From the IMG/VR virus record IMGVR_UViG_3300042465_005589, positions 124,001 to 188,000 of that record: 64,000 nt of DNA. One strand, 5' to 3'. Below, one piece after another: positions 13,097-39,063 of the stretch. A program made the position numbers and the translations under genes. Under the pieces are notes generated by a model. It saw nothing but the letters and a program-made list of their open reading frames with translations, was not told the DNA's origin and made no database searches. Positions within the stretch are counted from its first letter, which is position 1. Each line of letters starts with the position of its first letter.

Positions 13097-13513
13097 TTAT
13101 TTTAAAATTGTTTTTACACGAATGTGAAAATTATCTTCAAACCATTTTTTGAACGGTTCTTCCCATCTGTCACCAAAAATACTATCTAATTGATTTGATA
13201 AATGAGTATTCTCAAATTCAAGTATTGGGGAATCTTTAATATTTTTTTTTAATTGATGGCGGTCATACTCATGTCCTGTTGGTGGCAAAGCACTCTCATC
13301 TTCAATCCAATATTCTTTATCATACCATCTAAATAAAGTATTCTCGCCCCACCCTTCTTCATAATCACCTTCATAGAATTCCACAGCGTAATCAACCTCA
13401 TTACCCATATCGTCAGAACCAGGTGTCCAACCAATATTATTAACATCAAACATATTGTTAAGATGTTTAACGACTAAGTCATTAATTTTATTTTCAGTTA
13501 TAATAAATTTCAT
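13097..13513 (-). CDS. leader-bearing member of the expanded paralog family
   Basis: Start MKFIITENK at 13513; ends FKKWFEDNFHIRVKTI. Confidence 0.8.
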   Translation of the reverse strand: MKFIITENKINDLVVKHLNNMFDVNNIGWTPGSDDMGNEVDYAVEFYEGDYEEGWGENTLFRWYDKEYWIEDESALPPTGHEYDRHQLKKNIKDSPILEFENTHLSNQLDSIFGDRWEEPFKKWFEDNFHIRVKTILK

Positions 13514-13608
13514 ATCAATAAATATTTGATTTTCCATTATAAAACAAAAAATCACCAATTAAGGTGATTATTTTCCACTAAAACAGATATTTTAGTCATT
13601 ATTTTCCA

Positions 13609-13902
13609 TTAAGGGTTGTGTAATATATGTGTCTTATCTTTTGTTAAATACTTAAAAACACAATTATCTTCAGTAACAAATGGGTAAAATCCCGTAATAT
13701 CACTAATAAAATTATCAATTATTAACTCATTACCATTTTTAAAGACTAAAATTCGGTGAAAAGTTAATGGATTATACTCAATATTTTTCACGTTTTTAAC
13801 AATTATTTCGTAATTCTTCTTTTTATCAATGCGAACCACAAATTTAATATCCGGATAAAATACTTTTATAACCTTCCTTAAACCATTTAACTTATCCATC
13901 AT
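13609..13902 (-). CDS. hypothetical protein
   Basis: 97-aa ORF with its own terminator. Confidence 0.7.
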   Translation of the reverse strand: MMDKLNGLRKVIKVFYPDIKFVVRIDKKKNYEIIVKNVKNIEYNPLTFHRILVFKNGNELIIDNFISDITGFYPFVTEDNCVFKYLTKDKTHILHNP

Positions 13903-13964
13903 AGTTTAATTATAAGAAACAAAAACCCCCAATCAAGGGGGTTATTGTTTTATTAATTTAAATA

Positions 13965-15038
13965 TTAAATCAACGAATCATATGTTTGTTGTCCAACAAT
14001 TCCATCTACCGCAAGACCATTATCTTTTTGATATTGTTTAACCATTTCTTTTGTGGTTGGTCCATAAATACCGTCACATTTTTCAACATCATCTTTACAT
14101 GCTTCAACATCAGTAGTTATAGAACCCGAAGTTGTTCCACTATATCCAATTTCAATTAATATTTTTTGAACTTGTTTAACTAAATGACCTTTCGCATTTA
14201 ACCCAATGACTTTATTATCTTCAGTTACCGCTGACCAATCTGTATCAGTTGGTTGTACATATCCGGATGCGTTTTTTGAAATATCTTTAAATTTAAGTAC
14301 AGGTTTTGTTCCATCCCACTCCCAAGTACCTCTACTTTTACCAGTTCCTTGACCTTTATTCCAAACATAAACATCACCATCATCATAAATTCTCATTTGG
14401 CTATCAGTATCATTTGGGTCAGTAGAATTGACTATCACTAAATCCCATATATTTTCATCATCTTCTAATTTATCCATTTTATCAAATTTCCAATTTGAGT
14501 CTTTATTACCTTCATAATATTTAACAACATCTTCCCATTTATCTTTATTTGTAGATTCAGTTTTTGCTGGTGCCGCAGCCGCAGGTGCAACATCTTTCAA
14601 TGGTTTTGTTATTTTTTTAAATGTTAATACCGGAAATTCATCACCATCAATATTTAGTTTAATAGGTGTTGTAATAACAGATTTAAACTTATTTAGTCTT
14701 GTAATAATTTTATTTAAATCATCTCCTTGACTAAATTCTCCTTTAATCATATCGGTAAAACTAGAATAACCTGTTTTTTTATCGGCAAATAATGTTAGTA
14801 ATCGATGAAGTTCACTTGCATATGTAATCTTATTAAGACCATCTATTATATCTTGAGGCTCAGTTCCCATTCCGGATGCACCATCAATCATATTTTTGTA
14901 TGCAAGTTGAGCGTTTTGTTCTTTTTTACTAACAGGGGGGCGTTGTTCACCAATTTCTTGTTCTGAAATAACAACACCTCGTTGATATCCCAAAAGGTAT
15001 TTCATATACCCAAGTTCTTCTGTAATTATATTTTTCAT
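13965..15038 (-). CDS. annexin-like repeat plus C-terminal peptidoglycan-binding domain protein
   Basis: MIDGASGMGTEPQDII...GYSSFTDMIKGEFS (annexin-like); VKQVQKIL...DGIYGPTTKEMVKQYQKDNGLAVDGIVGQQT (PG_binding_1). Confidence 0.7.
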   Translation of the reverse strand: MKNIITEELGYMKYLLGYQRGVVISEQEIGEQRPPVSKKEQNAQLAYKNMIDGASGMGTEPQDIIDGLNKITYASELHRLLTLFADKKTGYSSFTDMIKGEFSQGDDLNKIITRLNKFKSVITTPIKLNIDGDEFPVLTFKKITKPLKDVAPAAAAPAKTESTNKDKWEDVVKYYEGNKDSNWKFDKMDKLEDDENIWDLVIVNSTDPNDTDSQMRIYDDGDVYVWNKGQGTGKSRGTWEWDGTKPVLKFKDISKNASGYVQPTDTDWSAVTEDNKVIGLNAKGHLVKQVQKILIEIGYSGTTSGSITTDVEACKDDVEKCDGIYGPTTKEMVKQYQKDNGLAVDGIVGQQTYDSLI

Positions 15039-15074
15039 AATTTAAATTTCTTTATTATAAATATACCAATAAAG

Positions 15075-15104
15075 AAAAAACCCCACTTTATAGGTGGGGT
15101 TTTT
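15075..15104. terminator. intrinsic terminator
   Basis: AAAAAACCCCAC-TTTATAG-GTGGGGTTTTT. Confidence 0.75.
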
Positions 15105-15105
15105 A

Positions 15106-15291
15106 TTAATCTTCAGATGATACCATTAAGTAGTAGTTAATTCCTTGATACTTAAAAAAGATATTTCTTAAATTTGTCACAGGAGGAGCTGAGGACCATA
15201 ATTCTGTTTTACCTATTTGTCCCTCCATAGGTTTAATTATACATTTTTTATCCGTGAACTTAATTGTTCTTGTAATTTGTGATTCTTCCAT
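15106..15291 (-). CDS. hypothetical protein
   Basis: 61-aa ORF. Confidence 0.6.
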   Translation of the reverse strand: MEESQITRTIKFTDKKCIIKPMEGQIGKTELWSSAPPVTNLRNIFFKYQGINYYLMVSSED

Positions 15292-15342
15292 ATAGTCGTT
15301 TTTAAAAAAATAGTCAATATGTTTGAAACAGTAAATGTATTT

Positions 15343-15459
15343 TTATAATTGTGACTTTAATCTTGAAAGGATTTCGTTGTTTTTATTCATTATTTTTAAT
15401 TTCTTAACAACATTCACTCTGTTTTTTTTAGGTTTCCCTGGTTTTCTTGATTTTGACAT
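15343..15459 (-). CDS. small very basic peptide (38 aa)
   Basis: Hand-translated MSKSRKPGKPKKNRVNVVKKLKIMNKNNEILSRLKSQL. Confidence 0.6.
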   Translation of the reverse strand: MSKSRKPGKPKKNRVNVVKKLKIMNKNNEILSRLKSQL

Positions 15460-15484
15460 AATAATGATTTACTAATAAGTATTG

Positions 15485-15877
15485 CTATTCTTCATTTTTA
15501 AAATGTAGTCCCGCCTTACCAAACGACCAAGAGGTTAAATCAATCCCCATATATTTCAAATCATCTACCATTTCAGGTTCAAAAGCCCAATTTAACGGGT
15601 ATTTTTTTGCAACGGAATTTTTAAAATGTTTTTCTTTATACTCATCACATAACTCTACAGGAATTGGAACTTCAGAATCAATTACAAGTATGTAATCGTA
15701 TTTATCCCTCCAACTATCGGCAAACTTCCAACGTTCCTCACCTTTATATAAATTAACAATATGAACACTGAAGTTATACTTCGTGTCGGAACAAGTCATT
15801 TTATTTATCCTCTTATTACCAAACGTGTTCATATATTTGGTAATCATTCTAGGGACTGCTTCGTCTTCTATATTCAT
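15485..15877 (-). CDS. hypothetical protein
   Basis: 130-aa ORF. Confidence 0.75.
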   Translation of the reverse strand: MNIEDEAVPRMITKYMNTFGNKRINKMTCSDTKYNFSVHIVNLYKGEERWKFADSWRDKYDYILVIDSEVPIPVELCDEYKEKHFKNSVAKKYPLNWAFEPEMVDDLKYMGIDLTSWSFGKAGLHFKNEE

Positions 15878-16248
15878 TATATCCTTTCAATTGTTTTAAC
15901 ATTATAACCGTATACCTTTTCAAACCAATCTTTTAATAACTCATCAAAATATTGACTAAACATAGATTCTATATTTGGGAATGAATAATGTTCTCCGTAT
16001 CGTAGTATTGGTAAATCTTCTTCTTCACCCTCATCACCCGGTTCACTTTGATATTGCATAACCCAATCGTCATCTTCGTAATCTTCTTCAATATCATTAT
16101 AAAAATTCAAAACATCCCAATCAACATAATCTCCTTTTTCTTGAACCCAATAATCATAAGATTTTTCGGTGTGGTCTAAATTTGAATAGGGTTGCATTAC
16201 TTTATCAAAGATAGAGAACAACTTATCATATTTAATTTTAATATCCAT
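15877..16248 (-). CDS. member of the expanded paralog family
   Basis: Likely start MDIKIKY at 16248; ends KDWFEKVYGYNVKTI. Confidence 0.75.
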   Translation of the reverse strand: MDIKIKYDKLFSIFDKVMQPYSNLDHTEKSYDYWVQEKGDYVDWDVLNFYNDIEEDYEDDDWVMQYQSEPGDEGEEEDLPILRYGEHYSFPNIESMFSQYFDELLKDWFEKVYGYNVKTIERI

Positions 16249-16249
16249 A

Positions 16250-16621
16250 TTACCAAGTTCTGCAAGCCCAATATTTAGCTTTCCATCTTGGTCCCGGATT
16301 ATCACAATTCATTCTTGCTCTAAAAGATTTTCTTCTAGCAGGATTATTTTTCTTAATGACCATTCGTTTTCCTTTTGCAGATTTTCCACCAAAACCAAAG
16401 TTAACCTTAACAACATTTCCTTTGTCGTTCTTAACATAAACTTTGAATTTCTTAATATCTCCTTGCATAATTTTACCAAGTTGAACTTTACGTCCCTGAT
16501 ATTCCGCCTCAGTCAACAAATCACCAACAACAAAGTTGGTCTCCTCAACTGAACCATAAAAACTATCATCTAATTCATTGAATAGTCTATTGTATTGTGA
16601 TTCTGTAATTATTATTTTCAT
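16250..16621 (-). CDS. leader-bearing basic protein of a family common in T4-like aquatic phages
   Basis: MKIIITESQY; EAEYQGRKVQLGK...KKFKVYVKN...NPARRKSFRARMNC...KYWACRTW. Confidence 0.75.
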   Translation of the reverse strand: MKIIITESQYNRLFNELDDSFYGSVEETNFVVGDLLTEAEYQGRKVQLGKIMQGDIKKFKVYVKNDKGNVVKVNFGFGGKSAKGKRMVIKKNNPARRKSFRARMNCDNPGPRWKAKYWACRTW

Positions 16622-17457
16622 TTTTTATAACTTGTCATTGTCGGTTTATTTCCTGTTCCCACTTTTGGGTCTTTCTTTTCTGCTCTTCTCTTTTGTTGAG
16701 TCATCGCTTTCTTCTCATCCTTATCATACGATGAAGCCACCTTAGGTGTTTCAGATGAAACCTTTTTTGATGGACGACATTTTGGATATGACTTACCATC
16801 AGCATCCTTTCTTCCACAAGGTGGATGTTTCCCGTCAACTTTTTTGCTTACATCAACCCACTTTTCCTTAAACCAATTACGCAAATCTTCATTAACATTT
16901 TCGTTCTTTGGTTTAATTCCTTTTTTCTTCATGTTGATTGCAATTGCTGCTTGTTGTGCCGGACTTGAAGCTTCATTAGTTTCCTCAGATTCGTTAGCCG
17001 ATTTTTTAACTGTTCTCCATCCACCACCTTTTGATTTATATCGTTTGGCTGCAGCACCATTACAATATGCACTCGGACAAACTTTATATTTTGACCTTGC
17101 CCAAGCCAAACTTCGAGACCATAACTCAGGATTGGTTGGTTTATTCTTACCTTCGGTTAACTGATTATCACCGGAACAATGTTTATCAAAATAATTATAA
17201 ATTAGTTCTTTAAATTCATTTTCAAGTAGTTCTAAAAAATCATCTTTATCCATACCATCAAAATCATTAATGTCCGTAAAATAATCTTCAGCGTTGTATT
17301 TAACACCTTCCATAAAATGCTCATCATTGTCATAATCACAAACATACATACCATCCATTAAGTTGTATAGGAAATTTTCAATTCTATGTATTCTTCTTCT
17401 AATTGAAGAATCCATCTCCAATAACTTGTATTGTCTTTCTGTAATTATAACTTTCAT
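16618..17457 (-). CDS. leader-bearing multi-module protein (DUF5872-like modules)
   Basis: KPTNPELW...PSAY...YKSKGGGW; EASSPAQQAAIAI; EDLRNWFKEKWVD...PKCRP. Confidence 0.7.
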   Translation of the reverse strand: MKVIITERQYKLLEMDSSIRRRIHRIENFLYNLMDGMYVCDYDNDEHFMEGVKYNAEDYFTDINDFDGMDKDDFLELLENEFKELIYNYFDKHCSGDNQLTEGKNKPTNPELWSRSLAWARSKYKVCPSAYCNGAAAKRYKSKGGGWRTVKKSANESEETNEASSPAQQAAIAINMKKKGIKPKNENVNEDLRNWFKEKWVDVSKKVDGKHPPCGRKDADGKSYPKCRPSKKVSSETPKVASSYDKDEKKAMTQQKRRAEKKDPKVGTGNKPTMTSYKK

Positions 17458-17497
17458 ATAAATAAATATCCCCCAACTACTAAATAGTAATGGGGGA

Positions 17498-18011: not shown

Positions 18012-18016
18012 AATTT

Positions 18017-18511: not shown

Positions 18512-19918
18512 ATGAAAAATGCAATTAATTTATTAATGGAAAAGTGGATTAAAGGTGTGGATACATATACCCACAATGGTTCTACTTGGTTAATATTTAC
18601 CGATTCCAAAAAATGGGTAATTGAACTAACCGATTCTAAAACCCTATGGTATAACTACAACTTCTTCAAACAAATATTTGATTTCACTTCGTTGGATGTT
18701 GTGGAGAATCAATCATACATCACCAAATGGGTGGAAGATAATATTATCAATGGGGTAAACCATACCGGAGCACCTGATTGGAATAGAGATAAGGTTGCCA
18801 AATATGCAATTGAAAATGGTGTGAAGAACACCAAACAATCACATATAGATAACCGAATCCAAGAACGTGTTGAAGGTACCATTGAAAATGGGGTAAAGAA
18901 AACCAATTATAAATCTCTAGTGACAAGAGGTAATATTGAAGACATCATTGATGGCGGGGTTAAGGAAACTATTAGTACACTACGACGTACTCTTCTTGGG
19001 GTTGACGATATCATTCAAAATGGAATAAAAGAAACCCGTTTGGAAATGAACATTACTGAAGGAGAAGTTGATGACATCATTCAAGATGGGGTGAAACACA
19101 CCTTTGGTGATAAGTGGCATAAGCATAATTTTGTTGAAGACATAATTCAAAATGGTGTAAGAGATACACAGAGTAACCCGTATGAAAATACAAGTTGGAT
19201 TGAAGGTGTTATTAAAAAAGGTGTAAAACTTACCGGACGCATTCATAAAGATTATACTGAAGTTGTTGAATACCTTATTGAAAATGGTGTGAGGAAAACC
19301 TATCACGACACAGATAACTATACTGACGATGTGAAAGAAGTCATTAGAGAAGGTGTGAAAGAAACAAAGGAGATGTTGGATTGGGTTTGTACCGACCGAA
19401 TGTTATCTAATGTTCTTGAAAATGGTGTGAGAACTTCCCACCCACGTGCATATGTAGATGAAAAAATGATTGATAAGGTGATTGATAAGGGTGTAATAGA
19501 AACCCACGATGATGTATATCACCACAAAGGAAGAATTGATGGTGTGATTAAGAATGGTATTAAAGAAACGTTGAAAGCATCATATCTTAATGTTGATGAT
19601 GTAATTCAAGATGGTGTTAAAGAAACAAAAACACCCGGTGATTGTGACCTTGTATCAACCATTGAATGGATGAATGAAAATAATACCAGTAATGTTCCCA
19701 TAATGATTGATGATGTTATTGAGAATGGTGTTAAAGAAACTGTGGCAGCCGGATGTGTTGACAAAAAGACGGGTATTTTTCATTATCGGATTCAAGAACA
19801 AGTTGATGATGTTGTTGACAATGGTGAAAAAGTTAACGGAACTTACGCTGGCGGTCAACGTCAAAGTGAAAAATGTAAATCCGTTGTTGAATATGGAACA
19901 AAAAACCCCACCGATTAG
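18512..19918 (+). CDS. repeat-spacer protein: family domain followed by 17 units of VxxxIxNGVKET + ~10 variable residues
   Basis: 10 of 16 linkers are exactly 10 aa and all differ; own promoter (18500) and terminator (19900). Confidence 0.9.
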   Translation: MKNAINLLMEKWIKGVDTYTHNGSTWLIFTDSKKWVIELTDSKTLWYNYNFFKQIFDFTSLDVVENQSYITKWVEDNIINGVNHTGAPDWNRDKVAKYAIENGVKNTKQSHIDNRIQERVEGTIENGVKKTNYKSLVTRGNIEDIIDGGVKETISTLRRTLLGVDDIIQNGIKETRLEMNITEGEVDDIIQDGVKHTFGDKWHKHNFVEDIIQNGVRDTQSNPYENTSWIEGVIKKGVKLTGRIHKDYTEVVEYLIENGVRKTYHDTDNYTDDVKEVIREGVKETKEMLDWVCTDRMLSNVLENGVRTSHPRAYVDEKMIDKVIDKGVIETHDDVYHHKGRIDGVIKNGIKETLKASYLNVDDVIQDGVKETKTPGDCDLVSTIEWMNENNTSNVPIMIDDVIENGVKETVAAGCVDKKTGIFHYRIQEQVDDVVDNGEKVNGTYAGGQRQSEKCKSVVEYGTKNPTD

Positions 19919-19929: not shown

Positions 19930-19932
19930 AAA

Positions 19933-20463: not shown

Positions 20464-22050
20464 ATGTCAAATATCATAAAATATAATTTAAGTACATCAC
20501 CAAATTCAATACAATCAGGTAATTTTAATGTTGCTGTTAATAATACTCCAACAAATTTAACCGGATTTTATAACGGAATTTCCCCAATAAATGGGGGTTA
20601 CACCATTTACATTAATAAAGAGTCTAATGGACCATCCATTTACGTCCCACAAAATGATAGTGATTTAATTCAAATAGTTAAACAATTGGGGGGTAATGTT
20701 TCAACTGCAGCGGAAGCTTTGGTTTGGATTAATTCTCAAAGTAATATGACGGTTCTAAATAATAATTACCCCTCAATTGTAACCAGTGGACTTGTATTAA
20801 ATGTAGATGCAGGATTTGTATCTTCATACCCAAAAACCGGAACAACTTGGAAAGATTTGAGCGGTGGTGGAAATAACGGTACTTTAGTTAATGGACCAAC
20901 TTATAGTAGTGGGAGTATAGTTTTTGATGGCGCGGATGATAGAGTTCAGACAACATATTCTCCAAATTTTGGGGATTTTACAGTTTGTCTTATTTTTAAA
21001 GATAATGGTTCAAATGCTTGGGGGAGATTAGTAGATAAATTATATACTACAGGTTTTTTCATTTCAAGCTATTTTGCATCATCAGGCGCTAATTACGTAG
21101 GCGCCGGAATAATAGAGCCTAATTATCCTTACGGAATAGCACTTCCTTATGAATCAGGAAAGTATCACTATTTCGCCTCAGTTAGAAACGGAACAACTCA
21201 TACAATCTACCTAGATGGTATTACCCAAACCACAAGCAAAACAGTATCTTCTAATCTTCTAGATAGTACTTCTATCGCCTTTGGGGATTGGAGCGGGGGG
21301 GTAAGTCAACCTTTTAAAGGTGATTTACCATATGTTCAAATTTACAACAGAGCACTCTCAGCCGCTGAGGTTCTACAAAACTATTACGCAGGACTACAAA
21401 GATTTATACCAACAGACGGATTAGTACTTTCATTAGATGCTCAAAATACAAATTTATATGCAATCTCTCCAACCACAGCATACGATGTGAGTGGGAATAA
21501 TATAAATGGTACATTAACAAATGGTGTTCAATATGTTGGTGATGGAAATGGTTCATGGAGATTTGACGGGGTTGATGATGTGATAACATTAGGTTATCAA
21601 CCATTATTAAATAATACTGATATAACACAGGAAGCTTGGGTTAATGGAAATTCTTTTACGAGTTGGCACGGAATTATTTCAAACATGCCTTCTTGGGGGA
21701 CAGGGTTTAGTTTACAAATTGGTATAATACAAAATATTGCGGCAATGGTTAGTGGGACTTATTTGAAAACTTCTTGGGCGCCCTCTGTAAATGTTTGGTA
21801 TCACATTGTGGCAACACATAGAAGTAGTGATAATTTCACTGCATTATATGTTAATGGTGTTTTAGAAAATACAACAACGCAAGCGGTAACTTATTCTGAA
21901 AATGCGATAACAACAATAGGGGTTTTTTATACTTCAGGGTCATTACCATTTAATGGTGAGATTGGGTCTGTTAAAACATACAACAGAGCATTAACGGCAA
22001 CAGAAGTAACAACAATATATAACGCAACTAAATCAAGATACGGATTATAA
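20464..22050 (+). CDS. tandem LamG/concanavalin A-like domain protein (virion/tail-associated)
   Basis: Two VTSGLVLNVDAG...WKDLSG.GNNGTLVNG...FDGADD...YNRALSAAEV units. Confidence 0.85.
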   Translation: MSNIIKYNLSTSPNSIQSGNFNVAVNNTPTNLTGFYNGISPINGGYTIYINKESNGPSIYVPQNDSDLIQIVKQLGGNVSTAAEALVWINSQSNMTVLNNNYPSIVTSGLVLNVDAGFVSSYPKTGTTWKDLSGGGNNGTLVNGPTYSSGSIVFDGADDRVQTTYSPNFGDFTVCLIFKDNGSNAWGRLVDKLYTTGFFISSYFASSGANYVGAGIIEPNYPYGIALPYESGKYHYFASVRNGTTHTIYLDGITQTTSKTVSSNLLDSTSIAFGDWSGGVSQPFKGDLPYVQIYNRALSAAEVLQNYYAGLQRFIPTDGLVLSLDAQNTNLYAISPTTAYDVSGNNINGTLTNGVQYVGDGNGSWRFDGVDDVITLGYQPLLNNTDITQEAWVNGNSFTSWHGIISNMPSWGTGFSLQIGIIQNIAAMVSGTYLKTSWAPSVNVWYHIVATHRSSDNFTALYVNGVLENTTTQAVTYSENAITTIGVFYTSGSLPFNGEIGSVKTYNRALTATEVTTIYNATKSRYGL

Positions 22051-22316: not shown

Positions 22317-22322
22317 TTTATA

Positions 22323-22640: not shown

Positions 22641-22999
22641 TCCTCAACAAATTCCTCAATTAATTTATTCAAACTTATTCCCAACATATCAAGACCAAGT
22701 ATTTTTAAAAAATTATTTTCGCTAATTTTACGATTGTGAGATTCACTTAAAACTAAGGTACCATATTCTTTACCTTGAGGGTGAAGATAATAATTATTTC
22801 CATTAACCTTAAACAAATACATTGGACCATAATTATTAAGTAACCACCTAAACTCATCTCTACCATCAGTAAACAAGTTTTGACCTTTAGGACCTAATTC
22901 AATCCAATTTGTAATTATTTCAATATTGTCGGATAAGTTATAACCCAATATATTATTGATTAACCCTTTTAATCTGTTTTCTGTTATTATTATTTTCAT
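22637..22999 (-). CDS. leader-bearing protein, paralog of 27999-28373
   Basis: MKIIITENRL...NNILGYNLSDNIEIITN...LLNNYGPMYL. Confidence 0.8.
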   Translation of the reverse strand: MKIIITENRLKGLINNILGYNLSDNIEIITNWIELGPKGQNLFTDGRDEFRWLLNNYGPMYLFKVNGNNYYLHPQGKEYGTLVLSESHNRKISENNFLKILGLDMLGISLNKLIEEFVEE

Positions 23000-23340
23000 A
23001 ATTCTTCCTCCACTCTTTTCCACCACCAGGGGTTATCGTCTCTCGCCGAAACATTATTTGAATGTAAACCATATTCCTCCAATAACCATTTTTTTAATAT
23101 TGTTTGAACATCAGAAAAATCTAATCCAAATATTTTGGTTAACCCACTCCATATATTAAACACATCAACATACACATTAGTGTTTGTTAAATGATAGTCA
23201 ATCATTACCTTACCGTCTTTAACATAGAAAAGACGAGTTGGGTTGGATTCGCTTGTAACCGAAGGTAACCCTCCAAATTTATCGGTCAACCATTTTAGGA
23301 CCAATCTATGTAATCTATCTTCAGTAATTATCATTCTCAT
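22996..23340 (-). CDS. leader-bearing family domain with a single spacer-like tail
   Basis: Ends KKWLLEEYGLHSNNV-SARDDNPWWWKR-VEEEL. Confidence 0.8.
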   Translation of the reverse strand: MRMIITEDRLHRLVLKWLTDKFGGLPSVTSESNPTRLFYVKDGKVMIDYHLTNTNVYVDVFNIWSGLTKIFGLDFSDVQTILKKWLLEEYGLHSNNVSARDDNPWWWKRVEEEL

Positions 23341-23341
23341 A

Positions 23342-23659
23342 TTAATTTAATCTTCTAGTAAAAAAAGTTGATTTTAATGCTGACGGTTCATTAAATTTAA
23401 TTGAAACATATTCTTTACAGATATCCACCAAATCAGGTATAGACATCCCTAACATATTTTTAGCGGTATAAAAATCATCGTAGTCAAATCGTATTGATTC
23501 TTGTTTGGTATCATATTCAAAAGCGGTACGACCATTATCATCCATATATTCATATAGAACGTGAGGATACCCCATACGTATCGGTCGTCTCCCGTGTTTC
23601 TCATAACCCCTAAAGGTCATATCAAAATATTTAAAGATGAGTTCTTTCTTTCTGTTCAT
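23342..23659 (-). CDS. member of the expanded paralog family
   Basis: KKELIFKYFD...YMDDNGRTAFEYD. Confidence 0.75.
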   Translation of the reverse strand: MNRKKELIFKYFDMTFRGYEKHGRRPIRMGYPHVLYEYMDDNGRTAFEYDTKQESIRFDYDDFYTAKNMLGMSIPDLVDICKEYVSIKFNEPSALKSTFFTRRLN

Positions 23660-23670: not shown

Positions 23671-24075
23671 CTAATTTAATCCGGAACAACGTCCACCTTT
23701 ACACGGGGACTTAGGACCATTATCTCCAGCCCAAAAAGTTCTTTCTCCTTTAGGTTCAGGATTTTCAGCAGCGTTCTTTTTTGTTCTATCATCAAATTCT
23801 TTATACCATTGGTCAAAAGTTTGTCCGGGTTTTTTATACTTTTCGTAAGATTTTGTCCAAACAAGTTTATTTCGTTCTTTCTTTAAAGAATCTTTAATAG
23901 CAAATGCTTTAGCCCGTTCTTGACGTAGAGCCTCCGCTTTTTCTTTATTAAGTTCAATTTGTTTTAATCTTTGTTGTTGAGGTGTTAAAACGGTAGTTGT
24001 CCCCCCACTAGTTACCGGAGGAGTGGTTTGTTCAATCAAAAAATTATACTGTGATTCTGTAATTAATATCTTCAT
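23671..24075 (-). CDS. leader-bearing hypothetical protein
   Basis: MKILITESQYNFLIEQ. Confidence 0.8.
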   Translation of the reverse strand: MKILITESQYNFLIEQTTPPVTSGGTTTVLTPQQQRLKQIELNKEKAEALRQERAKAFAIKDSLKKERNKLVWTKSYEKYKKPGQTFDQWYKEFDDRTKKNAAENPEPKGERTFWAGDNGPKSPCKGGRCSGLN

Positions 24076-27705: not shown

Positions 27706-27996
27706 TTAATAAAGTTCCTGGTAATTACGATAATAATCAATCCTATTACCAAAATTTTTTCTAATTAAATCAGTTACATAAACTTTCTGTCCTAATGTTA
27801 AATCCTGTCTATCCGTTAAGTCGGAAATAACACGACGAACAACCTCATCAAAATAATCATCACGATAATAAAATCTGGATACAATTGTAGGTTCACCCAT
27901 AGAAACCAAATACTTGTCAACAAGTTTTCTGATAAGGTCAATTCTTCTCTTAAACCATATGTTATTAAATTGATTCTCTGTAATTATTATTTTCAT
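27706..27996 (-). CDS. leader-bearing hypothetical protein
   Basis: MKIIITENQF. Confidence 0.8.
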   Translation of the reverse strand: MKIIITENQFNNIWFKRRIDLIRKLVDKYLVSMGEPTIVSRFYYRDDYFDEVVRRVISDLTDRQDLTLGQKVYVTDLIRKNFGNRIDYYRNYQELY

Positions 27997-27998: not shown

Positions 27999-28373
27999 CT
28001 ATTCTTCTTTTACAAAATTATCAATAATAGTGCTAAGAGGAATTCCAAACATATCAATACCCATATAAGATAATAGTCGATGTTCATCAATACGTTCAAC
28101 ATATTCGGGTTTATAACCACCTTCATAAATAAACCATTCACGACCTTCACGTTGTTGAGCCAACCACTTGCCATTTCCGGGTGTCTTAATCCAAAACATA
28201 GGTCCCCAATGATTTAATAGTGTATTAAATTCTCCTTTACTCTCAAACATACGACGTATAAGAACATTAGCTTCCCAATAATTTGTAATCATTTCAATCG
28301 TATCCGACAAGTCATACCCCAATGTGTTGTTGACCATATTCATCAACTTACTTTCTGCAATAATAATTCTCAT
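27999..28373 (-). CDS. leader-bearing protein, paralog of 22637-22999
   Basis: MRIIIAESKL...NNTLGYDLSDTIEMITN...LLNHWGPMFW. Confidence 0.8.
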   Translation of the reverse strand: MRIIIAESKLMNMVNNTLGYDLSDTIEMITNYWEANVLIRRMFESKGEFNTLLNHWGPMFWIKTPGNGKWLAQQREGREWFIYEGGYKPEYVERIDEHRLLSYMGIDMFGIPLSTIIDNFVKEE

Positions 28374-33911: not shown

Positions 33912-33914
33912 ATC

Positions 33915-35095: not shown

Positions 35096-35096
35096 A

Positions 35097-35870
35097 TTAT
35101 TTGAAGTCCGGTAATTTAGTATCTTTAATAAACTTCTTGTGCGAATCTTTATACGATTTTTGAGTCTCGTCAGTCACTTTCTTGGTGTACTGCCAATTCC
35201 AATATAAATCATCGTTTGGTTTGAATCCGTAGAATCCATGTACTTCCTTCTGTGTTTCACTTACTGTCTCCCCGTTCCAATTCTGCCCAACACAAATGAA
35301 ACCGGTCTCAATATCTTTTACAAGATTTGATTCCCCCAATGTTGCGTGTCTATTCTCAATCCAAGTCAGTCTCTCAATTAAGTTCTGATAAAACATATTT
35401 GTTTGTCCCCACCTTACCGAACTAAAGAATATAACAGCGTCAGATTCAAACAACTCTTTGGAAATCTTCCATAACTCATCCTTTGGGTTGTTATAACTTG
35501 CCCAACATCTATGGTCTCCCGATGGATTCTTTTTCTTATCTTTGAGCATCGCTTTCAGTAATCCACAAGAGTTACCATCCTTTCTCGATACATTTCCCTC
35601 ACAAGAAACAATATTAAGTTCCGAAACATCTATTAGAACTGACTTATCACCCAACTCATCGTTCAGGTACATCGCAATCATTTTTGACTTTGGAATGTCT
35701 ATGTTTTTATCATCCCAATTATATCTATTGGAACAACTAAGTAGTAATACTTTCTTTTTCTTTTTAAGAATATCTAAAGTATTCTTAATTGATTTCCAAG
35801 CATCGGACTGAACCATCTCTTCGGAAATCATAATCTCTCTTATTCTTTGTATATCTTCGTTTAAATTCAT
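35097..35870 (-). CDS. MNL.ED-leader flavodoxin-fold NAD(P)H-dependent FMN reductase / iron-sulfur flavoprotein-like
   Basis: LLLSCSNR...LIDVSELNIVSCEG...C...HRC...ESDAVIFFSSVRWG...LIERL. Confidence 0.8.
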   Translation of the reverse strand: MNLNEDIQRIREIMISEEMVQSDAWKSIKNTLDILKKKKKVLLLSCSNRYNWDDKNIDIPKSKMIAMYLNDELGDKSVLIDVSELNIVSCEGNVSRKDGNSCGLLKAMLKDKKKNPSGDHRCWASYNNPKDELWKISKELFESDAVIFFSSVRWGQTNMFYQNLIERLTWIENRHATLGESNLVKDIETGFICVGQNWNGETVSETQKEVHGFYGFKPNDDLYWNWQYTKKVTDETQKSYKDSHKKFIKDTKLPDFK

Positions 35871-35983
35871 AATGATAAATATAATGTTTGGTGAAACAGT
35901 TTTAATTGTTATATTGACGTATTTTTTTATTTATAAATATCTTACTAAGCGGAATAATTAAATATATGTTGTATCTTTGAAGT

Positions 35984-36268
35984 ATGAAATTACTTAAATA
36001 CTTAATCATCCGTCTAACAACCAAAGGGTCCGATAACGCCATTAAAGTATATAATACTTTATACCCAACAACTCAACCGGAAATCAAATACGTTAGAGTT
36101 CCCGTAACTGAATCAACTATTCAGGTTCCCAACTCACCTATGAAACCTGCCGATAAACGTGAAGAGCTTGAGGAATCATTATCCTACTTGAATAACAAGA
36201 AAGTTAAAACCAAACAGGACAAGGAATCCATCGAAATCATCAAGTCAATATTGAAGAATATGAAGTAG
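35984..36268 (+). CDS. hypothetical protein
   Basis: 94-aa ORF 4 nt after a TATCTTTG promoter, followed by a terminator. Confidence 0.7.
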   Translation: MKLLKYLIIRLTTKGSDNAIKVYNTLYPTTQPEIKYVRVPVTESTIQVPNSPMKPADKREELEESLSYLNNKKVKTKQDKESIEIIKSILKNMK

Positions 36269-36388
36269 TTACTTTTTGTGGTAAGATAGACCCCACCTTT
36301 TGGGGTTTATCTTGTGGTGATTGGTAATATATTTTATTCACGGTTTACTACGCATTGTGTAGTGTTACGCAAATGAAATATATCTGTT

Positions 36389-36503
36389 GATTACACTTTT
36401 TGGTACGAATAAATGTAATAGATAACACTTTTTGGTACGAATAAATGTAAATGTCCGTTATTACAAACATTATTATTGTTTTTGATTAGAATAACGGACA
36501 TTT
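36389..36503. repeat. tandem 30-nt direct repeat (period 32) followed by a perfect 14-bp inverted repeat
   Basis: GATWACACTTTTTGGTACGAATAAATGTAA at 36389 and 36421; AAATGTCCGTTATT (36449) / AATAACGGACATTT (36490). Confidence 0.85.
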
Positions 36504-36837
36504 AATCCTCATTGTGATACCCCATCAAATATACTTCTTCGGGTTCTAACCTTATTCTATCTTTAAACCACCAAAAAATAACTCTTTGTAGTTCTTCCTC
36601 ACCAAATGAGAAAACCGATAGAGGTAACCAAAAATCCCTATAAACATATAATCCCCCATTATTCTCTAACCATTTCAATATAATTTTACCATCACTATCT
36701 TTGAATAACACTCGGTGATTACTAAACACTGAATTTACATTCATATCTTTATCTTCACGTGTTAATTTACTCAAGACATTATCTAATACCTTATAGGATA
36801 ATTGTCTTCTTTTATCTTCTGTAAGAAGTACTCTCAT
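36502..36837 (-). CDS. leader-bearing family-domain protein
   Basis: MRVLLTEDK; FKDSDGKII...FWWFKDRIRLEP. Confidence 0.8.
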   Translation of the reverse strand: MRVLLTEDKRRQLSYKVLDNVLSKLTREDKDMNVNSVFSNHRVLFKDSDGKIILKWLENNGGLYVYRDFWLPLSVFSFGEEELQRVIFWWFKDRIRLEPEEVYLMGYHNED

Positions 36838-37223
36838 ATATAATCATTAGTTATTTGAGCAACATTTAATCCTGTGTTTTCTTCAAACCATTCCTTAAAT
36901 ACCGGTAACCATCTATCACCAAATAAAGATGTTAGTTCTTGACCAACTCTCGGATATATAGATAGTAAAGGACATTTATAATTATGTAAGTGACCATAAC
37001 CAGCAAAGAATTCATCTTCCGGACCAGCATTTGCGTTACACCCATAGTAAATGTAGCTATCAGCATCATCTATAAAGAAAACAATATCACCCCACTTATC
37101 AACATCTCTTTGATATGAACCGTGTCTTGTATTTTCATTCCACCCATAATCCGGATAAAATTCTTTGTCTAAATACTTACGTATAATCTGATTAACTTTA
37201 TTTTCTGATATAATTACTTTCAT
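36834..37223 (-). CDS. leader-bearing family-domain protein
   Basis: MKVIISENK; FGDRWLPVFKEWFEENTGLNV. Confidence 0.8.
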   Translation of the reverse strand: MKVIISENKVNQIIRKYLDKEFYPDYGWNENTRHGSYQRDVDKWGDIVFFIDDADSYIYYGCNANAGPEDEFFAGYGHLHNYKCPLLSIYPRVGQELTSLFGDRWLPVFKEWFEENTGLNVAQITNDYI

Positions 37224-37831
37224 TCTTTTATAATTCTAAATCTCAATAATGGTTTACCATTAATTGTGATGTCACCTTTATCATTTTTTTCTATTGTCTT
37301 AACAATAACTTTTTTGTTTTTAAATTTACCCCCCATTAGAGTATCACCAACTTTAATATCTAACTTAATCATTTCACTTAATGTTAATTCTTCTTCATCA
37401 TGATGATTCCAAGTATCACCACCTGTTCCTTTGTATATTAATCTAACGGCATTCGCCGGAATATCCCCAAAGGTAACGATATGTTTAGTATCACCACCCT
37501 CAAAATGAGCGTCTTTATACCATTGCACACCAGCTCTTTCAGTATCAATCACCCATATGTCATCATCATAAGTTGAATCAAACATATCTTTCTTCTTTAA
37601 ACTATCTGTTGCAAACACAGCAGGAATACATTCTTCATCTTCACCATAATTACTATCGGCATAAATCAAATAACATTCCCCCAAAGATACCTGAAGACCT
37701 GTAGTTGAAATATTATCTCTATTTGATGGATTTGATGAATGAACAATAAATCTTCCGGGAGTAATCTCTTCCCCCTTCACTCGTTGTTCTTGTAGTTTTC
37801 TATATTGTGTTTCTGTTATAATTACTTTCAT
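37220..37831 (-). CDS. leader-bearing ADP-ribosyltransferase-fold-like protein
   Basis: FIVHSS...NISTTGL...PAVFAT...YDDDIWVIDT...GDIPANAVRLI; extra C-terminal module IKVGDTLMGGKFKNK. Confidence 0.55.
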   Translation of the reverse strand: MKVIITETQYRKLQEQRVKGEEITPGRFIVHSSNPSNRDNISTTGLQVSLGECYLIYADSNYGEDEECIPAVFATDSLKKKDMFDSTYDDDIWVIDTERAGVQWYKDAHFEGGDTKHIVTFGDIPANAVRLIYKGTGGDTWNHHDEEELTLSEMIKLDIKVGDTLMGGKFKNKKVIVKTIEKNDKGDITINGKPLLRFRIIKE

Positions 37832-38139
37832 TAGTCCCTTACCATTTTAACTTCCATACCCCAACTTGCACCATATGTATTAATATAAAGACCAAACATT
37901 GAATTAATATCATTTCTTATTTGTCTAGCCATATAACTTGGACTATGTGTCATCTTACCATCAATGAAGTCAATGTTTAGTATATTTCTAACAATATCAT
38001 TCTCACCTTTTTCATTTGGTTCACCGGCTAAACGAATTAACTTTGTTGTAAAAAACACCCTTTTAACCATAGGATATCCTTTAAGAATATATTTCTCAAT
38101 TGAACTATTTAACCTATTTTCTGTGATTATTACTTTCAT
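37831..38139 (-). CDS. leader-bearing hypothetical protein
   Basis: MKVIITENRL. Confidence 0.8.
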   Translation of the reverse strand: MKVIITENRLNSSIEKYILKGYPMVKRVFFTTKLIRLAGEPNEKGENDIVRNILNIDFIDGKMTHSPSYMARQIRNDINSMFGLYINTYGASWGMEVKMVRD

Positions 38140-38732
38140 TATGTACCTATATTATTCAATCGTGCGTTATAAACACTTCTGTAGTCAGATTTTAGTTTAT
38201 CATCAGGTAATTCTTCCAATTCACTTCTTCTTTTTAATGTTTGAGTATCTAAATAATCAATCATATATTCTCTACTCAACTTATCAGTATCAACCATCTC
38301 ATAACATTTACGAGGGTCATCAGTTTCCAAAGTTTCATAAATTTCAAATTCCGGATGACCGGTCTCTTGTCCAAATTTGGGTGTGTATCTATCATCATAC
38401 CATTCGGTTATCACATTATAAATAAATGTCTTTCTAACCTGTAACATTTTGGATAAAAACTCAATCTCCTCCGCATCAACATACAAATCACCTGTGAAAA
38501 ATTCATCAGTTTCATCATCAATATGATATCTGGCTTCAATAACTTTCTTACCACCTTTACACCACTCTTCAATAAAGATACCATAGTTATCTTCAGGTGG
38601 TGGAATAATTCTTTTTGAATTGGAGATTATACTCTCCATATGTTTAATAATAATACGTTCAAAGTTCGGATTAGATTTTGTAAATCTCTTCTGAACTTCC
38701 TCTCGTAATATTTTTCTAATTAAATTTTTCAT
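38139..38732 (-). CDS. leader-bearing hypothetical protein
   Basis: MKNLIRKILREE. Confidence 0.8.
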   Translation of the reverse strand: MKNLIRKILREEVQKRFTKSNPNFERIIIKHMESIISNSKRIIPPPEDNYGIFIEEWCKGGKKVIEARYHIDDETDEFFTGDLYVDAEEIEFLSKMLQVRKTFIYNVITEWYDDRYTPKFGQETGHPEFEIYETLETDDPRKCYEMVDTDKLSREYMIDYLDTQTLKRRSELEELPDDKLKSDYRSVYNARLNNIGT

Positions 38733-38733
38733 A

Positions 38734-39063
38734 TTAGTTTAATATATGTTTATTTACGTGATGAACTTTTTCAACCGGTAACTCAAAAAACTCCGAGAAC
38801 CATTTACCAACTAACCTTTTTACTTCAGGTGGAGTATAACTAAAATATGTAATTGGTTTTACCACATCTTCACAAATATATAACGTTTTATTTCTATCAC
38901 CATAAAGCATAATAACACCATCACCATTACGAAATTCGATTTTTTTTTGTTCTCCAACACTATCTGTCATATAACTAACATCTTCATACATATTAGAGAA
39001 GGCTTTATCTAATTCTTTTTTAGCTAATTGGTCTCTTCGGCTTTCTATTATCAAAATCTTCAT
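38734..39063 (-). CDS. leader-bearing family-domain protein
   Basis: Start MKILIIESR; GKWFSEFFELPVEKV. Confidence 0.8.
   Translation of the reverse strand: MKILIIESRRDQLAKKELDKAFSNMYEDVSYMTDSVGEQKKIEFRNGDGVIMLYGDRNKTLYICEDVVKPITYFSYTPPEVKRLVGKWFSEFFELPVEKVHHVNKHILN

What the first reader, a model, noticed from the sequence alone, without database searches (positions are those of the whole stretch)
13097..39063. One ~85-aa domain is expanded into at least ten dispersed paralogs and is the scaffold for both repeat-spacer proteins
Seen: ORFs at 13097, 15877, 17498, 22996, 23342, 36502, 36834 and 38734, plus the N-termini of 5959 and 18512, share this layout: K.I.KYL...; a beta-rich middle with DG..I..Y; and a C-terminal W.E..(Y/F).(L/V).V. 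The repeat unit VEEHYKVGVTST is exactly this C-terminal helix-strand. ORF 22996-23340 ends with one spacer-like insert plus a partial unit (VEEEL), like a one-unit array. Inference: a diversifying family in which some members grow by reiterating their last element around variable inserts.
Basis: partly seen in the sequence, partly recalled or inferred. Interest (0 to 1): 0.6.

Follow-up and report, generated by a model that had tools for sequence, protein, structure and literature searches.

The report
Phage proteins with CRISPR-like coding arrays
A small protein domain known only from a group of giant freshwater phages occurs about a dozen times per genome, and in some copies the last 36 bases of the domain have been reiterated around unrelated 30-base inserts, giving something that looks like a CRISPR array at the DNA level yet is kept open and read as protein; what adds the inserts is unknown.

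Summary
The window is part of a 318-kb uncultured jumbo phage. Decoy-controlled profile searches and HHalign unite eight of the ten named ORFs, plus two copies outside the window. Related phages carry 12-17 copies each. ORF 17498 matches only through its C-terminal element. The N-terminus of ORF 18512 is not united by sequence, though its predicted secondary structure has the same order. The repeat unit VEEHYKVGVTST is the end of helix 3 plus strand 5 of the domain.

Comparative data add more. In 38 loci fetched by the N-domain alone, ORF 5959-type arrays have 1-7 units: 36-nt repeats, near-identical within each array, and mostly 30-nt unrelated spacers. The coding frame holds 1 stop in 750 spacer codons; the other five frames hold about 6.6%. 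New units sit next to the domain, and old shared units and degenerate repeats sit distally. Spacers encode random-like decapeptides and are GC-richer than the phage. Two other lineages show the same anatomy.

No Cas1, reverse transcriptase, bacterial array, protospacer or Rfam repeat was found. Best reading: translated cassette arrays built by an unidentified ruler-like insertion process. Function is unknown.

The parts
5959..6693 (-). ORF 5959 gene from its likely start (MTKLEK...; 244 aa): N-terminal domain plus an 8-repeat array
   Evidence: Translation. Orthologues start here. HHalign to the small paralogs gives probability 98.1%. AlphaFold residues 1-95 have pLDDT about 90.
6421..6693 (-). 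Domain of ORF 5959 (helix, four strands, two helices, one strand), including repeat 1 at 6421-6456
5959..6456 (-). Array of eight 36-nt repeats, at 6421-6456, 6355-6390, 6289-6324, 6223-6258, 6157-6192, 6091-6126, 6025-6060 and 5959-5994 (the last degenerate and carrying the stop), separated by seven unrelated 30-nt spacers
   Evidence: Seven matches to the repeat against 0 expected by chance.
18512..19918 (+). ORF 18512 (468 aa): N-terminal domain-like region (about 18512-18766), then about 15 diverged units [VI][ED]D[IT][IL]xNGVKET with a dominant 22-aa period. This is an 'old' array whose repeats are conserved as protein, not as DNA.
13097..13513 (-). Paralogue, subgroup A (expanded middle), 138 aa from MKFIITE
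15877..16248 (-). Paralogue, subgroup A, 123 aa
17498..17740 (-). Short 80-aa protein that shares only the C-terminal helix-strand element with the family
22996..23340 (-). Paralogue, subgroup B, 114 aa. Its tail is SARDDNPWWWKR + VEEEL*, a possible single spacer plus a truncated repeat. Its stop overlaps the ATG of the next gene.
   Evidence: (orthologue P0001 keeps the tail)
23342..23659 (-). Paralogue, 105 aa, lacking the MKIIITE start
36502..36837 (-). Paralogue, subgroup B, 111 aa
36834..37223 (-). Paralogue, subgroup A, 129 aa
38734..39063 (-). Paralogue, subgroup B, 109 aa. Its orthologues are widespread on 200-325 kb phage contigs.
22637..22999 (-). Partial relative (MKIIITE start plus N-terminal half) that ends after helix 3. 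ORF 27999-28373 is similar.
37831..38139 (-). Weak or partial relative, matching mainly through the N-terminal helix motif

Best explanation
SHOWN. The named ORFs belong to an unannotated, phage-restricted alpha/beta domain of about 95 residues: helix 1, a four-strand meander, helices 2 and 3, strand 5. It is present in 12-17 copies per genome in a clade of freshwater jumbo phages, almost always as stand-alone proteins of 100-140 aa.

In at least three lineages (ORF 5959 type, ORF 18512 type, P0378 type), the 36 bp that encode the end of helix 3 and strand 5 have been reiterated. Each new copy is separated from the next by about 30 bp of unrelated DNA, giving a 66-bp (22-codon) period.

The arrays are translated, or at least kept open in one frame. 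Units turn over mainly at the domain-proximal end. Distal repeats decay, and distal cassettes are old and shared between phages. Recombination between repeats shuffles, duplicates and deletes cassettes.

Young spacers look like arbitrary, GC-richer, non-phage DNA that merely lacks stop codons. Old cassettes, as in the window's ORF 18512, have become ordinary conserved protein sequence.

INFERRED.
- Each unit is added by a ruler-like insertion event at the junction between the domain (...ITKW) and the first repeat. The event duplicates the 36-bp repeat and captures a fragment of about 30 bp, the outcome that CRISPR adaptation gives.
- Because 66 is a multiple of 3 and about half of random 30-mers are stop-free, only mild selection is needed to keep the gene open.
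- The agent is unidentified. It could be an unknown phage function, or a host spacer integrase acting off target.
- At the protein level, the product is a folded domain carrying a flexible or beta-hairpin tail of conserved 12-mers that present variable decapeptide loops. Its role (binding, decoy or other) is unknown.
For: Family:
- Decoy-controlled searches.
- HHalign probabilities of 97.5%, 98.1% and 90.8%.
- Census of 12, 16, 17, 13 and 14 copies in five genomes.
- 850 clusters at E<=1e-3 among 1.84 billion representatives, nearly all 100-135 aa, with no fused Pfam domain.
- No Pfam or PHROG match.
- A confident AlphaFold domain whose only good structural neighbours are viral hypothetical proteins.

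Array anatomy and translation:
- Repeats differ by 0-3 nt, and spacers are unrelated.
- 38 loci were retrieved by the N-domain only. In 36 the array stays in frame to a conserved end.
- Of 77 distinct spacers, 69 are 30 nt, 3 are 33, 3 are 27 and 2 are 29.
- Frame 0 has 1 stop in 750 codons against 6.6% in the other five frames, P=4e-21.

Polarity:
- 113 distinct arrays hold 179 spacer families, of which 117 are singletons.
- Singletons have a mean relative position of 0.30; common spacers 0.70; P=1e-19.

DNA-level unit:
- The base before GTGGAG is G in 97% of cases although the codon it closes varies. The same holds in P0378.
- Repeats carry array-specific variants.
- The repeat uses rare codons, with a codon adaptation index of 0.48.

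Spacers are random-like and foreign-looking:
- No codon-position signature, and amino-acid composition close to the expectation from base composition.
- GC 37.5% in ORF 5959-type arrays, and up to 47.6% in the youngest ORF 18512-type array (L102). Flanks are 31.5%, and stop-free 30-mers from the phage's own genome are 32.8%.
- No source in the phage's own genome.

Other lineages:
- L102 has 8 identical 36-nt repeats with 30-nt spacers. L094, L097, L101 and L091 have young proximal units and old distal ones.
- P0378.

Protein-level constraint on old cassettes:
- Synonymous-only differences in GRSMSLPFYK, MVDYKEITNQ and others.
- A shared ordered vocabulary of cassettes in close relatives of ORF 18512.
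Against: - No enzyme that could do the insertion was found. There is no Cas1 or reverse transcriptase in the 318-kb genome, and no conserved neighbour gene (at most 11 of 34 loci).
- No spacer source was found. Three spacers have no match in IMG/VR beyond the arrays themselves. INPHARED gave nothing. 401 sampled Bacteroidota genomes gave nothing.
- No unit gain has been observed directly. Polarity could partly reflect stronger constraint on distal units.
- Some first-position spacers, such as RSISRSLIYK, are shared while middle ones differ, so recombination blurs the picture.
- Translation is inferred from frame statistics only. An open frame could be kept for reasons other than the peptide, for example to avoid polarity on downstream genes.
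- AlphaFold gives no confident structure for either array (pLDDT about 30).
- The ORF 18512 N-domain is not joined to the family by sequence.
Confidence: 0.6

Rival explanations
1. The ORF 5959 array is an ordinary non-coding CRISPR array carried by the phage. The ORF across it is a gene-calling artefact.
For: The array has 36-nt near-identical repeats, 30-nt unique spacers and a degenerate last repeat, with conserved trailer-end and variable leader-end spacers. Its geometry resembles that of type II and VI-B arrays; this resemblance is my own recollection and was not tested.
Against: - Frame 0 has 1 stop in 750 spacer codons against 6.6% in the other five frames, in loci retrieved independently of ORF length.
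- Spacer lengths other than 30 are mostly 27 or 33.
- The first repeat is the C-terminus of a protein domain with paralogues (probability 98%).
- The upstream 'leader' is coding sequence.
- There is no Cas1 in the genome and no Rfam CRISPR repeat match.
- The repeat is absent from 185,579 species genomes.
- The sister array in ORF 18512 conserves its repeats as protein with synonymous variation.
Confidence: 0.03
2. This is an ordinary tandem-repeat protein. Whole 66-bp units duplicate by slippage or unequal crossing-over, linkers then diverge fast under diversifying selection, and gene conversion keeps the repeats identical. No insertion of new DNA occurs.
For: - Unit number varies, cassettes are duplicated and shuffled (for example QEFGWRLQKE occurs twice in P0154), and repeats evolve in concert within arrays.
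- Some spacer families differ by point mutations.
- Phage recombination is efficient (general knowledge).
Against: - Within-array spacer pairs are no more alike than random (mean identity 0.28 against 0.29), while their flanking repeats are 92-100% identical, synonymous sites included.
- Similarity between spacers is bimodal: near-identical or unrelated.
- Young spacers lack coding signatures and are GC-richer than the genome.
- The repeat boundary is out of codon phase, with a fixed G.
Confidence: 0.15
3. The inserting agent is the host's CRISPR spacer integrase (Cas1-Cas2). It acts off target on a repeat-like gene end, so the arrays are 'neo-CRISPR' scars, filtered for an intact reading frame and later co-opted.
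For: - The outcome matches integrase chemistry: duplication of a repeat-length target, a fixed insert length, and leader-proximal polarity.
- Off-target integration that seeds new arrays is documented (Nivala et al. 2018, as cited in PMC6698737).
- Spacer GC differs from the phage's.
- SD motifs are rare in this genome. That is typical of Bacteroidota hosts, many of which have 36+30 arrays (own knowledge).
Against: - No bacterial genome among 185,579 species representatives has either repeat, and none of 401 sampled Bacteroidota does.
- Three lineages with different repeat sequences show the same process.
- No protospacers were found.
- The host is unknown.
- It does not explain why hundreds of phages keep long arrays.
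Confidence: 0.2
4. Functional reading: the array proteins are multi-core precursors of short peptides, as in ribosomally made natural products or signalling peptides. The conserved 12-mers would be recognition or cleavage sites and the 10-mers the hypervariable cores.
For: Conserved flanks around hypervariable cassettes of under 30 bp, in otherwise identical DNA, are known from cyanobactin-type precursors (PMC3062557). There is an N-terminal conserved part followed by a reiterated flank-core layout.
Against: - No modifying enzyme, protease or transporter lies next to either gene.
- Cores are random-like, with no conserved Cys, Ser, Thr or Pro positions.
- The 'leader' is a folded domain whose paralogues have no cores.
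- Old cassettes of ORF 18512 are 13-40 residues long and conserved in order.
Confidence: 0.08
5. The N-terminal region of ORF 18512 is not a member of the family. Only the reiterated C-terminal element is shared, by transfer or convergence.
For: HHalign probability is at most 20% with every subfamily, even with 33 diverse orthologues. jackhmmer finds nothing.
Against: - The AlphaFold helix/strand order and lengths match those of ORF 5959.
- The weak alignments are always in the same register, strand 4 to strand 5.
- Diverged orthologues carry KWFESRFLNI..V, the family's C-terminal motif.
- Both models share the same top BFVD hits.
- Both arrays have the same 12+10 unit and a similar terminal unit.
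Confidence: 0.2

Closest known systems
CRISPR arrays (36-nt repeat with 30-nt spacer, as in type II and VI-B loci) and 'neo-CRISPR' arrays from off-target Cas1-Cas2 integration
   Same: Near-identical direct repeats; unique spacers of fixed length; polarised turnover next to one end; decay of distal repeats; old spacers shared at the distal end; spacers compositionally foreign.
   Different: - It lies inside a gene and is kept open in one frame.
- The first repeat is the end of a protein domain.
- There is no non-coding leader.
- There are no cas genes, no bacterial array with the repeat, no protospacers, and no Rfam repeat family.
- Old arrays conserve repeats as amino acids, not nucleotides.
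Multi-core precursor peptides of ribosomal natural products (cyanobactin pat/tru type)
   Same: Short hypervariable cassettes embedded in conserved, nearly DNA-identical flanks, reiterated within one ORF (PMC3062557).
   Different: No biosynthetic neighbours. Cores are random-like. There is a folded N-terminal domain with many core-less paralogues. Unit number reaches 26.
Beta-hairpin repeat proteins with a period of about 20 residues (choline-binding / cell-wall-binding repeats, clostridial CROP repeats)
   Same: Period of 20-22 residues, made of a conserved segment that could form a tight hairpin (IQ-NG-VK, YK-VG-VT) plus a variable linker. This comes from my own reading of the motif.
   Different: There is no sequence match to those Pfam families. 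No confident structure was obtained. In those families the linkers are not unrelated between units.
Diversity-generating retroelements in phages
   Same: Targeted hypervariability in a phage protein.
   Different: No reverse transcriptase and no template repeat. The variation is by whole-cassette insertion, not adenine-directed substitution.
Small alpha+beta folds of the YjbR/MmcQ, YdhG (DUF1801), TfoX-N and T4 MotA C-terminal kind
   Same: These are the weak structural neighbours of both N-domains.
   Different: TM-score at most 0.5 and Z at most 5.8, below the level that shows a shared fold. There is no sequence relation.

Membership tests
The paralogue family itself (about 95-aa domain) | Full-length profile match to the core members, beyond decoys | tested here: met
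   Met for 13097, 15877, 22996, 23342, 36502, 36834, 38734 and the 5959 N-terminus.
The paralogue family itself (about 95-aa domain) | Full-length profile match for ORF 17498 and for the ORF 18512 N-terminus | tested here: not met
   ORF 17498 matches over 24 C-terminal columns only. ORF 18512 N-terminus: probability at most 20%. Predicted helix/strand order is the same.
CRISPR array | Near-identical direct repeats of 23-50 nt, separated by unique spacers of similar length | tested here: met
CRISPR array | Non-coding locus with a leader | tested here: not met
   The array is in frame with a domain. Frame 0 has 1 stop in 750 codons against 6.6% elsewhere. The upstream sequence is coding.
CRISPR array | Associated cas genes, or the same repeat in a host array | tested here: not met
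   No Cas1 in the genome (other cas families were not scanned). The repeats are absent as arrays from 185,579 species genomes and from 401 Bacteroidota. There is no Rfam CRISPR repeat match.
CRISPR array | Spacers match mobile elements (protospacers) | tested here: inconclusive
   No match for 3 spacers in IMG/VR, for the whole array in INPHARED, or in the phage's own genome. Most spacers and the metagenomes were not searched.
CRISPR array | Transcript processed into guide RNAs | not testable with these tools
Diversity-generating retroelement | Reverse transcriptase and a template repeat near the variable region | tested here: not met
   No RVT_1 match in the genome. Spacers have no second copy in the genome.
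Multi-core ribosomal peptide precursor | Adjacent modifying enzymes or protease, and conserved residues in the cores | tested here: not met
   Neighbours have no such domains. There is no conserved neighbour. Core composition is random-like.
Any Pfam / PHROG family | Match above the curated threshold | tested here: not met
   The sub-threshold Dodecin and SPMIP1 hits fall on repeat units only.

The most novel reading that the evidence does not exclude
A previously undescribed DNA-insertion process operates in a clade of jumbo phages. It works like CRISPR adaptation: a 36-bp target duplication plus a ruler-measured insert of about 30 bp at a fixed junction. Its target is the 3' end of a protein-coding domain, so it writes strings of new, essentially random decapeptides into proteins. 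That would be a natural generator of protein novelty, or a protein-level record of captured DNA. It acts in at least three gene lineages and is represented by well over a thousand sequenced variants.
Probability: 0.35. Interest if true: 0.92.

Novelty: categorically new. Interest (0 to 1): 0.8.

Why it matters
If the reading is right, these genes show a way of making new protein sequence that is neither point mutation, domain shuffling nor retroelement mutagenesis. Unrelated short DNA is inserted in register between copies of a gene's own last 36 bases and is then translated.

This would matter in four ways:
- It gives a natural system in which random peptides enter a protein and are seen at all ages, from GC-rich newcomers to conserved old cassettes. 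That makes de novo sequence birth directly observable.
- It raises the question of which enzyme measures 30 bp and duplicates 36 bp without Cas1 in the phage. This could link to, or be independent of, the origin of CRISPR adaptation.
- It warns that CRISPR finders will call these genes arrays and gene callers will call them proteins.
- It marks an abundant, unannotated family in freshwater jumbo phages (850 clusters of the domain, more than 1,600 array proteins) whose function is open.

Tried and rejected
- CRISPR array misread as an ORF: rejected on frame statistics.
- Phage-encoded Cas1 or reverse transcriptase: none found.
- Host array with the same repeat: two whole-collection scans gave 0 hits and one chance hit inside a Bacteroides protein. 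A BLAST of the L102 array against 401 Bacteroidota genomes gave only chance hits on repeat sequence.
- Rfam: nothing.
- RNA structure of the repeat: weak hairpin, z -1.8, not informative.
- Protospacer hunts: own genome, fetched loci, INPHARED and three IMG/VR scans were all negative.
- Known phage relatives: none in INPHARED by DNA or protein.
- Known fold: Foldseek against PDB gave no hit at E<0.1. VIA-align against 48,161 chains gave Z at most 5.8, aligning helices only. The ESM Atlas returned only viral hypothetical proteins.
- Feature search of the Atlas: no usable hit.
- Conserved neighbour as candidate machinery: none.
- My interim idea that VEEEL of ORF 22996 is just the ribosome-binding site of the next gene: weakened. 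SD motifs are nearly absent upstream of genes in this genome (3 of 226).
- My idea that loss of the MKIIITE start is what permits arrays: contradicted by P0378, which has both.
- Pfam Dodecin, SPMIP1, DUF445 and bacHORMA_2 hits: sub-threshold matches on repeats, discarded.
- Literature: five searches found no description of such arrays.

Full report
**Source.** The window is bases 124,001-188,000 of a 318,164-bp IMG/VR virus record that CheckV rates complete. GC is about 31%. It has no DNA or protein relative among 50,697 deposited phages. A near-identical contig, related contigs of 200-325 kb, and many freshwater and some marine metagenome contigs exist. It is an uncultured jumbo phage. Canonical Shine-Dalgarno motifs are almost absent upstream of its genes.

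**The observation.**
- All ten ORFs are present. Several have likely internal starts at an MK(I/V)IITE motif.
- BLASTP already links them in two groups. Group A is 13097, 36834, 15877 and a copy at genome 286,821-287,240. Group B is 22996, the 5959 N-terminus, 36502, 38734 and a copy at genome 287,237-287,542.
- Iterated HMM searches over all 1,039 ORFs of the genome, mixed with reversed and shuffled decoys, merge A and B and add 23342. No decoy scored below E 0.1.
- After adding orthologues from two complete related phages and from the protein databases, HHalign gives:
  - A vs B: probability 97.5% (E 7e-12, 96 columns).
  - 23342-type vs B: probability 90.8% (92 columns).
  - 5959 N-domain vs the small paralogues: probability 98.1% (E 8e-14, 84 columns).
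- ORF 17498 and its orthologues match only over the last 24 columns.
- The N-terminus of ORF 18512 is not joined by any profile comparison, even with 33 orthologues down to 43% identity. Probability is at most 20%, although the weak alignments always fall in the same register.
- A family profile finds 12 copies in this genome, 16 and 17 in two complete relatives, and 13 and 14 in two fragments.
- It finds 850 clusters (50% identity) at E<=1e-3 among 1.84 billion representatives. Nearly all are stand-alone proteins of 100-135 aa. A few are tandem two- or three-domain proteins. None is fused to a known Pfam domain.
- Pfam and PHROGs have no model for it.

**Fold.**
- AlphaFold2, run with a 63-row alignment, models residues 1-95 of ORF 5959 at pLDDT about 90. 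The order is helix 3-16, strands 20-24, 27-35, 38-44 and 49-53, helices 54-65 and 69-84, and strand 88-94.
HHalign aligns it with WFSEFFELPV of ORF 38734.
- The ORF 18512 model has the same order and similar lengths, at pLDDT 63-85: helix 2-11, strands 16-21, 24-29, 35-39 and 44-48, helices 50-59 and 67-79.
- Both models have the same top hits in BFVD, all uncharacterised proteins of uncultured phages.
- No solved structure matches convincingly. Foldseek gave no E below 0.1 and VIA-align gave Z at most 5.8 on helices only. The ESM Atlas neighbours at TM about 0.7 are viral hypothetical proteins of about 113 aa.
- Weak resemblance of both N-domains to YjbR, YdhG and TfoX-N type folds is not enough to claim a fold.
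- Both arrays are modelled at pLDDT about 30.

**The ORF 5959 array at the DNA level.** It consists of eight 36-nt repeats and seven 30-nt spacers with an exact 66-nt period. Repeats differ by 0-3 nt, the last is degenerate, and the spacers are unrelated. That is CRISPR anatomy, so I tested whether the ORF is an artefact.

**Test of the ORF-artefact idea.**
- Word search found 204 relatives of 134-246 aa, with lengths in steps of 22 and with shared spacers in different combinations. That retrieval favours open frames.
- I therefore fetched DNA by the 79-residue N-domain alone: 12 viral and 26 metagenome loci.
- In 36 of the 38 loci the array stays in frame to a conserved end. Two have a 29-nt spacer that breaks the frame while the array continues.
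- Of 77 distinct spacers, 69 are 30 nt, three are 33, three are 27 and two are 29.
- Frame 0 holds 1 stop in 750 spacer codons, and that one lies behind a frameshift. Each of the other five frames holds 32-55 stops. The binomial P is 4e-21.
- The array is therefore kept open. The plain CRISPR reading is rejected.

**DNA-level signatures.** The process that builds the array nevertheless works on DNA.
- The base before each repeat is G in 97% of spacers, although it is the third base of a variable codon. The repeated block is therefore out of codon phase. The same holds in P0378.
- Repeats within one array share array-specific variants. Between phages, the first repeat is no more conserved at third positions (0.83) than the N-domain (0.81).
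- The repeat uses rare codons: GTG 12%, GGG 13%, TAC 21% of synonymous use.
- Spacer pairs within an array are as unlike as random pairs (0.28 against 0.29 identity).

**Nature of the spacers.**
- They have no codon-position signature. Their peptides have roughly the amino-acid composition expected from their base composition, with no positional motif.
- Their GC is 37.5%. Flanks are 31.6%, and stop-free 30-mers sampled from the phage's own genome are 32.8%.
- None has a source in the phage's own genome.

**Polarity and turnover.**
- Among 113 distinct arrays there are 179 spacer families, of which 117 were seen once.
- Singletons lie near the domain (mean relative position 0.30). Widely shared spacers lie distally (0.70; Mann-Whitney P 1e-19).
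- Closely related arrays differ by extra domain-proximal units, for example L016 vs L017, L019 vs L020 and L030 vs L032.
- Older cassettes differ by synonymous changes only (GRSMSLPFYK, MVDYKEITNQ).

**Other lineages.**
- ORF 18512 has at least 1,458 relatives of 296-784 aa.
- In the window copy and its close kin the units ([VI][ED]D[IT][IL]xNGVKET plus about 10 residues, dominant spacing 22 aa) are conserved as protein with synonymous variation: about 65% DNA identity and normal codon usage.
- Their cassettes form a shared vocabulary in roughly conserved order, without polarity. This is an old array.
- In more distant orthologues, fetched again by the N-domain (48 loci), the domain-proximal units are young. 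L102 has eight identical 36-nt repeats (GTTGAAGACACCATTCAAAATGGGGTTAAGAACACC) with unrelated 30-nt spacers of 47.6% GC, in a 31.5% GC context. L094, L097, L101 and L091 combine identical proximal repeats with degenerate distal ones and old cassettes.
- The two unit consensuses align without gaps (VE[ED]x[IY]xxGVxxT), and both proteins end in a similar terminal unit.
- A third lineage, P0378, is a canonical member starting MKLIITE. It has two identical repeats, one 30-nt spacer, and a third decayed repeat read out of frame.
- P0420 has a two-unit stretch inside a three-domain protein.
- In a related phage, a single-unit paralogue ending WVEEHYNLSVTT... sits next to the array gene.
- Reiteration of the last element is therefore recurrent in this family.

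**ORF 22996.**
- Its tail is conserved in a 94%-identical orthologue.
- The DNA ends AGA GTG GAG GAA GAA TTA TGA. GTGGAGGAA equals the first 9 nt of the ORF 5959 repeat and lies 69 nt (36+33) after TTGGAGGAA of its own unit.
- I first took GGAGG for the ribosome-binding site of the overlapping downstream gene. Such motifs are almost never found upstream of genes here.
- A single spacer plus a truncated repeat is therefore plausible, but one case cannot prove it.

**What adds the units.**
- Nothing was identified. There is no Cas1 or reverse transcriptase in the genome and no conserved neighbour.
- Neither repeat occurs as an array in 185,579 species genomes or in 401 sampled Bacteroidota.
- There is no Rfam repeat family and no protospacers in the limited searches possible.
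- The fixed insert length, the duplication of a fixed 36-bp block and the polarity are what a staggered-cut integrase with a ruler produces. Off-target Cas1-Cas2 integration that seeds new arrays is documented (Nivala et al. 2018, cited in PMC6698737).
- Since 66 is divisible by 3 and 52% of random 30-mers are stop-free, such events would often leave the gene intact.
- I therefore favour an insertion process with an unknown agent (confidence about 0.6 for the whole package). A host integrase acting off target is one candidate (0.2). Slippage plus divergence is the main conventional rival (0.15).
- A peptide-precursor role resembling cyanobactin cassettes (PMC3062557) is possible but unsupported by context.

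**Limits.**
- Translation and unit gain are inferred from comparative statistics, not observed.
- The function of the domain and of the arrays is unknown.
- The host is unknown.
- Only Cas1 and RVT_1 were scanned genome-wide.
- The costly profile search was used once, because the word search and the family scans left the protein open.

Noticed in passing
Whole genome; in the window at 13513, 16248, 16621, 22999, 23340, 24075, 27996, 28373, 36837, 37223, 38139, 39063 and 56645 (starts, minus strand): Seventeen ORFs begin with MK(I/V)IITE(N/S)(K/Q/R). There are 0 matches elsewhere in ORFs and 0 in reversed sequences. The set includes proteins that otherwise do not match the domain (16250-16621, 23671-24075, 27706-27996, 56115-56645). 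This is a shared N-terminal module of unknown role. Possible readings are a first strand of the fold or a sorting/processing signal.
   Followed up: partly
L036:1501-2100 and L038:1501-2110: In two related arrays a 29-nt spacer shifts the frame. The ORF stops early while 4-5 more repeats follow. These are pseudogenes, sequencing errors or tolerated untranslated arrays.
   Followed up: partly
Whole genome (226 ORFs of 150 aa or more): GGAG/GAGG lies within 18 nt upstream of only 3 of 226 long-ORF starts. GGAGG occurs 0.41 times per kb, yet every ORF 5959-type repeat contains GGAGG. Rare Shine-Dalgarno use hints at a Bacteroidota-like or cyanobacterial host (own knowledge). Starts were taken as the longest ORF, so this is a rough figure.
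   Followed up: partly
L111:1501-2172: The third, decayed repeat of P0378 is read in another frame, giving the C-terminus ...EGWRNITN*. A second paralogue (MKLIITENKLNDVV...) starts 15 nt after the stop in the 'intergenic' stretch that the gene caller left empty.
   Followed up: partly
P0377, P0383, P0392, P0420, P0455 (database proteins): Proteins with two or three tandem copies of the whole domain. P0420 also has an internal two-unit stretch (MVEDYYKLESVKP-YRLFTITDDL-VEEHYKLESVRP).
   Followed up: partly
window:22996-22999: The stop of ORF 22996 (TGA) overlaps the ATG of the next family-related gene (ATGA). Several family genes are packed head to tail on the minus strand, for example 36502/36834 and 22637/22996/23342.
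   Followed up: no
window:13965-15038 (-), 20464-22050 (+), 16618-17457 (-), 7418-7828 (-): Annotatable neighbours: a protein with a C-terminal peptidoglycan-binding domain (PG_binding_1, E 4e-15); a 528-aa protein with two Laminin_G_3 / concanavalin-like stretches, just downstream of ORF 18512 on the same strand; a DUF5872 protein; and a cytidylyltransferase-like protein.
   Followed up: no
window:3216-4502 (-): A 428-aa ORF that reads like a thymidylate synthase with extra inserted segments, by eye, from the identical copy listed for L005. It was not scanned.
   Followed up: no
window:6312-6392 (-), residues 127-153 of the long ORF 5959: Weak PHROG hits (phrog_23100 E 7e-4, phrog_35947 E 3e-3) fall exactly on one repeat unit. 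Unit-like peptides may therefore already sit unnoticed in PHROG families of unknown function.
   Followed up: no
L102, L094, L097 (ORF 18512-type arrays): The younger an array looks (identical repeats), the higher its spacer GC: 43-48% against about 32% in the flanks. Old arrays sit at 34-37%, as if inserts drift towards the phage's composition with age.
   Followed up: partly
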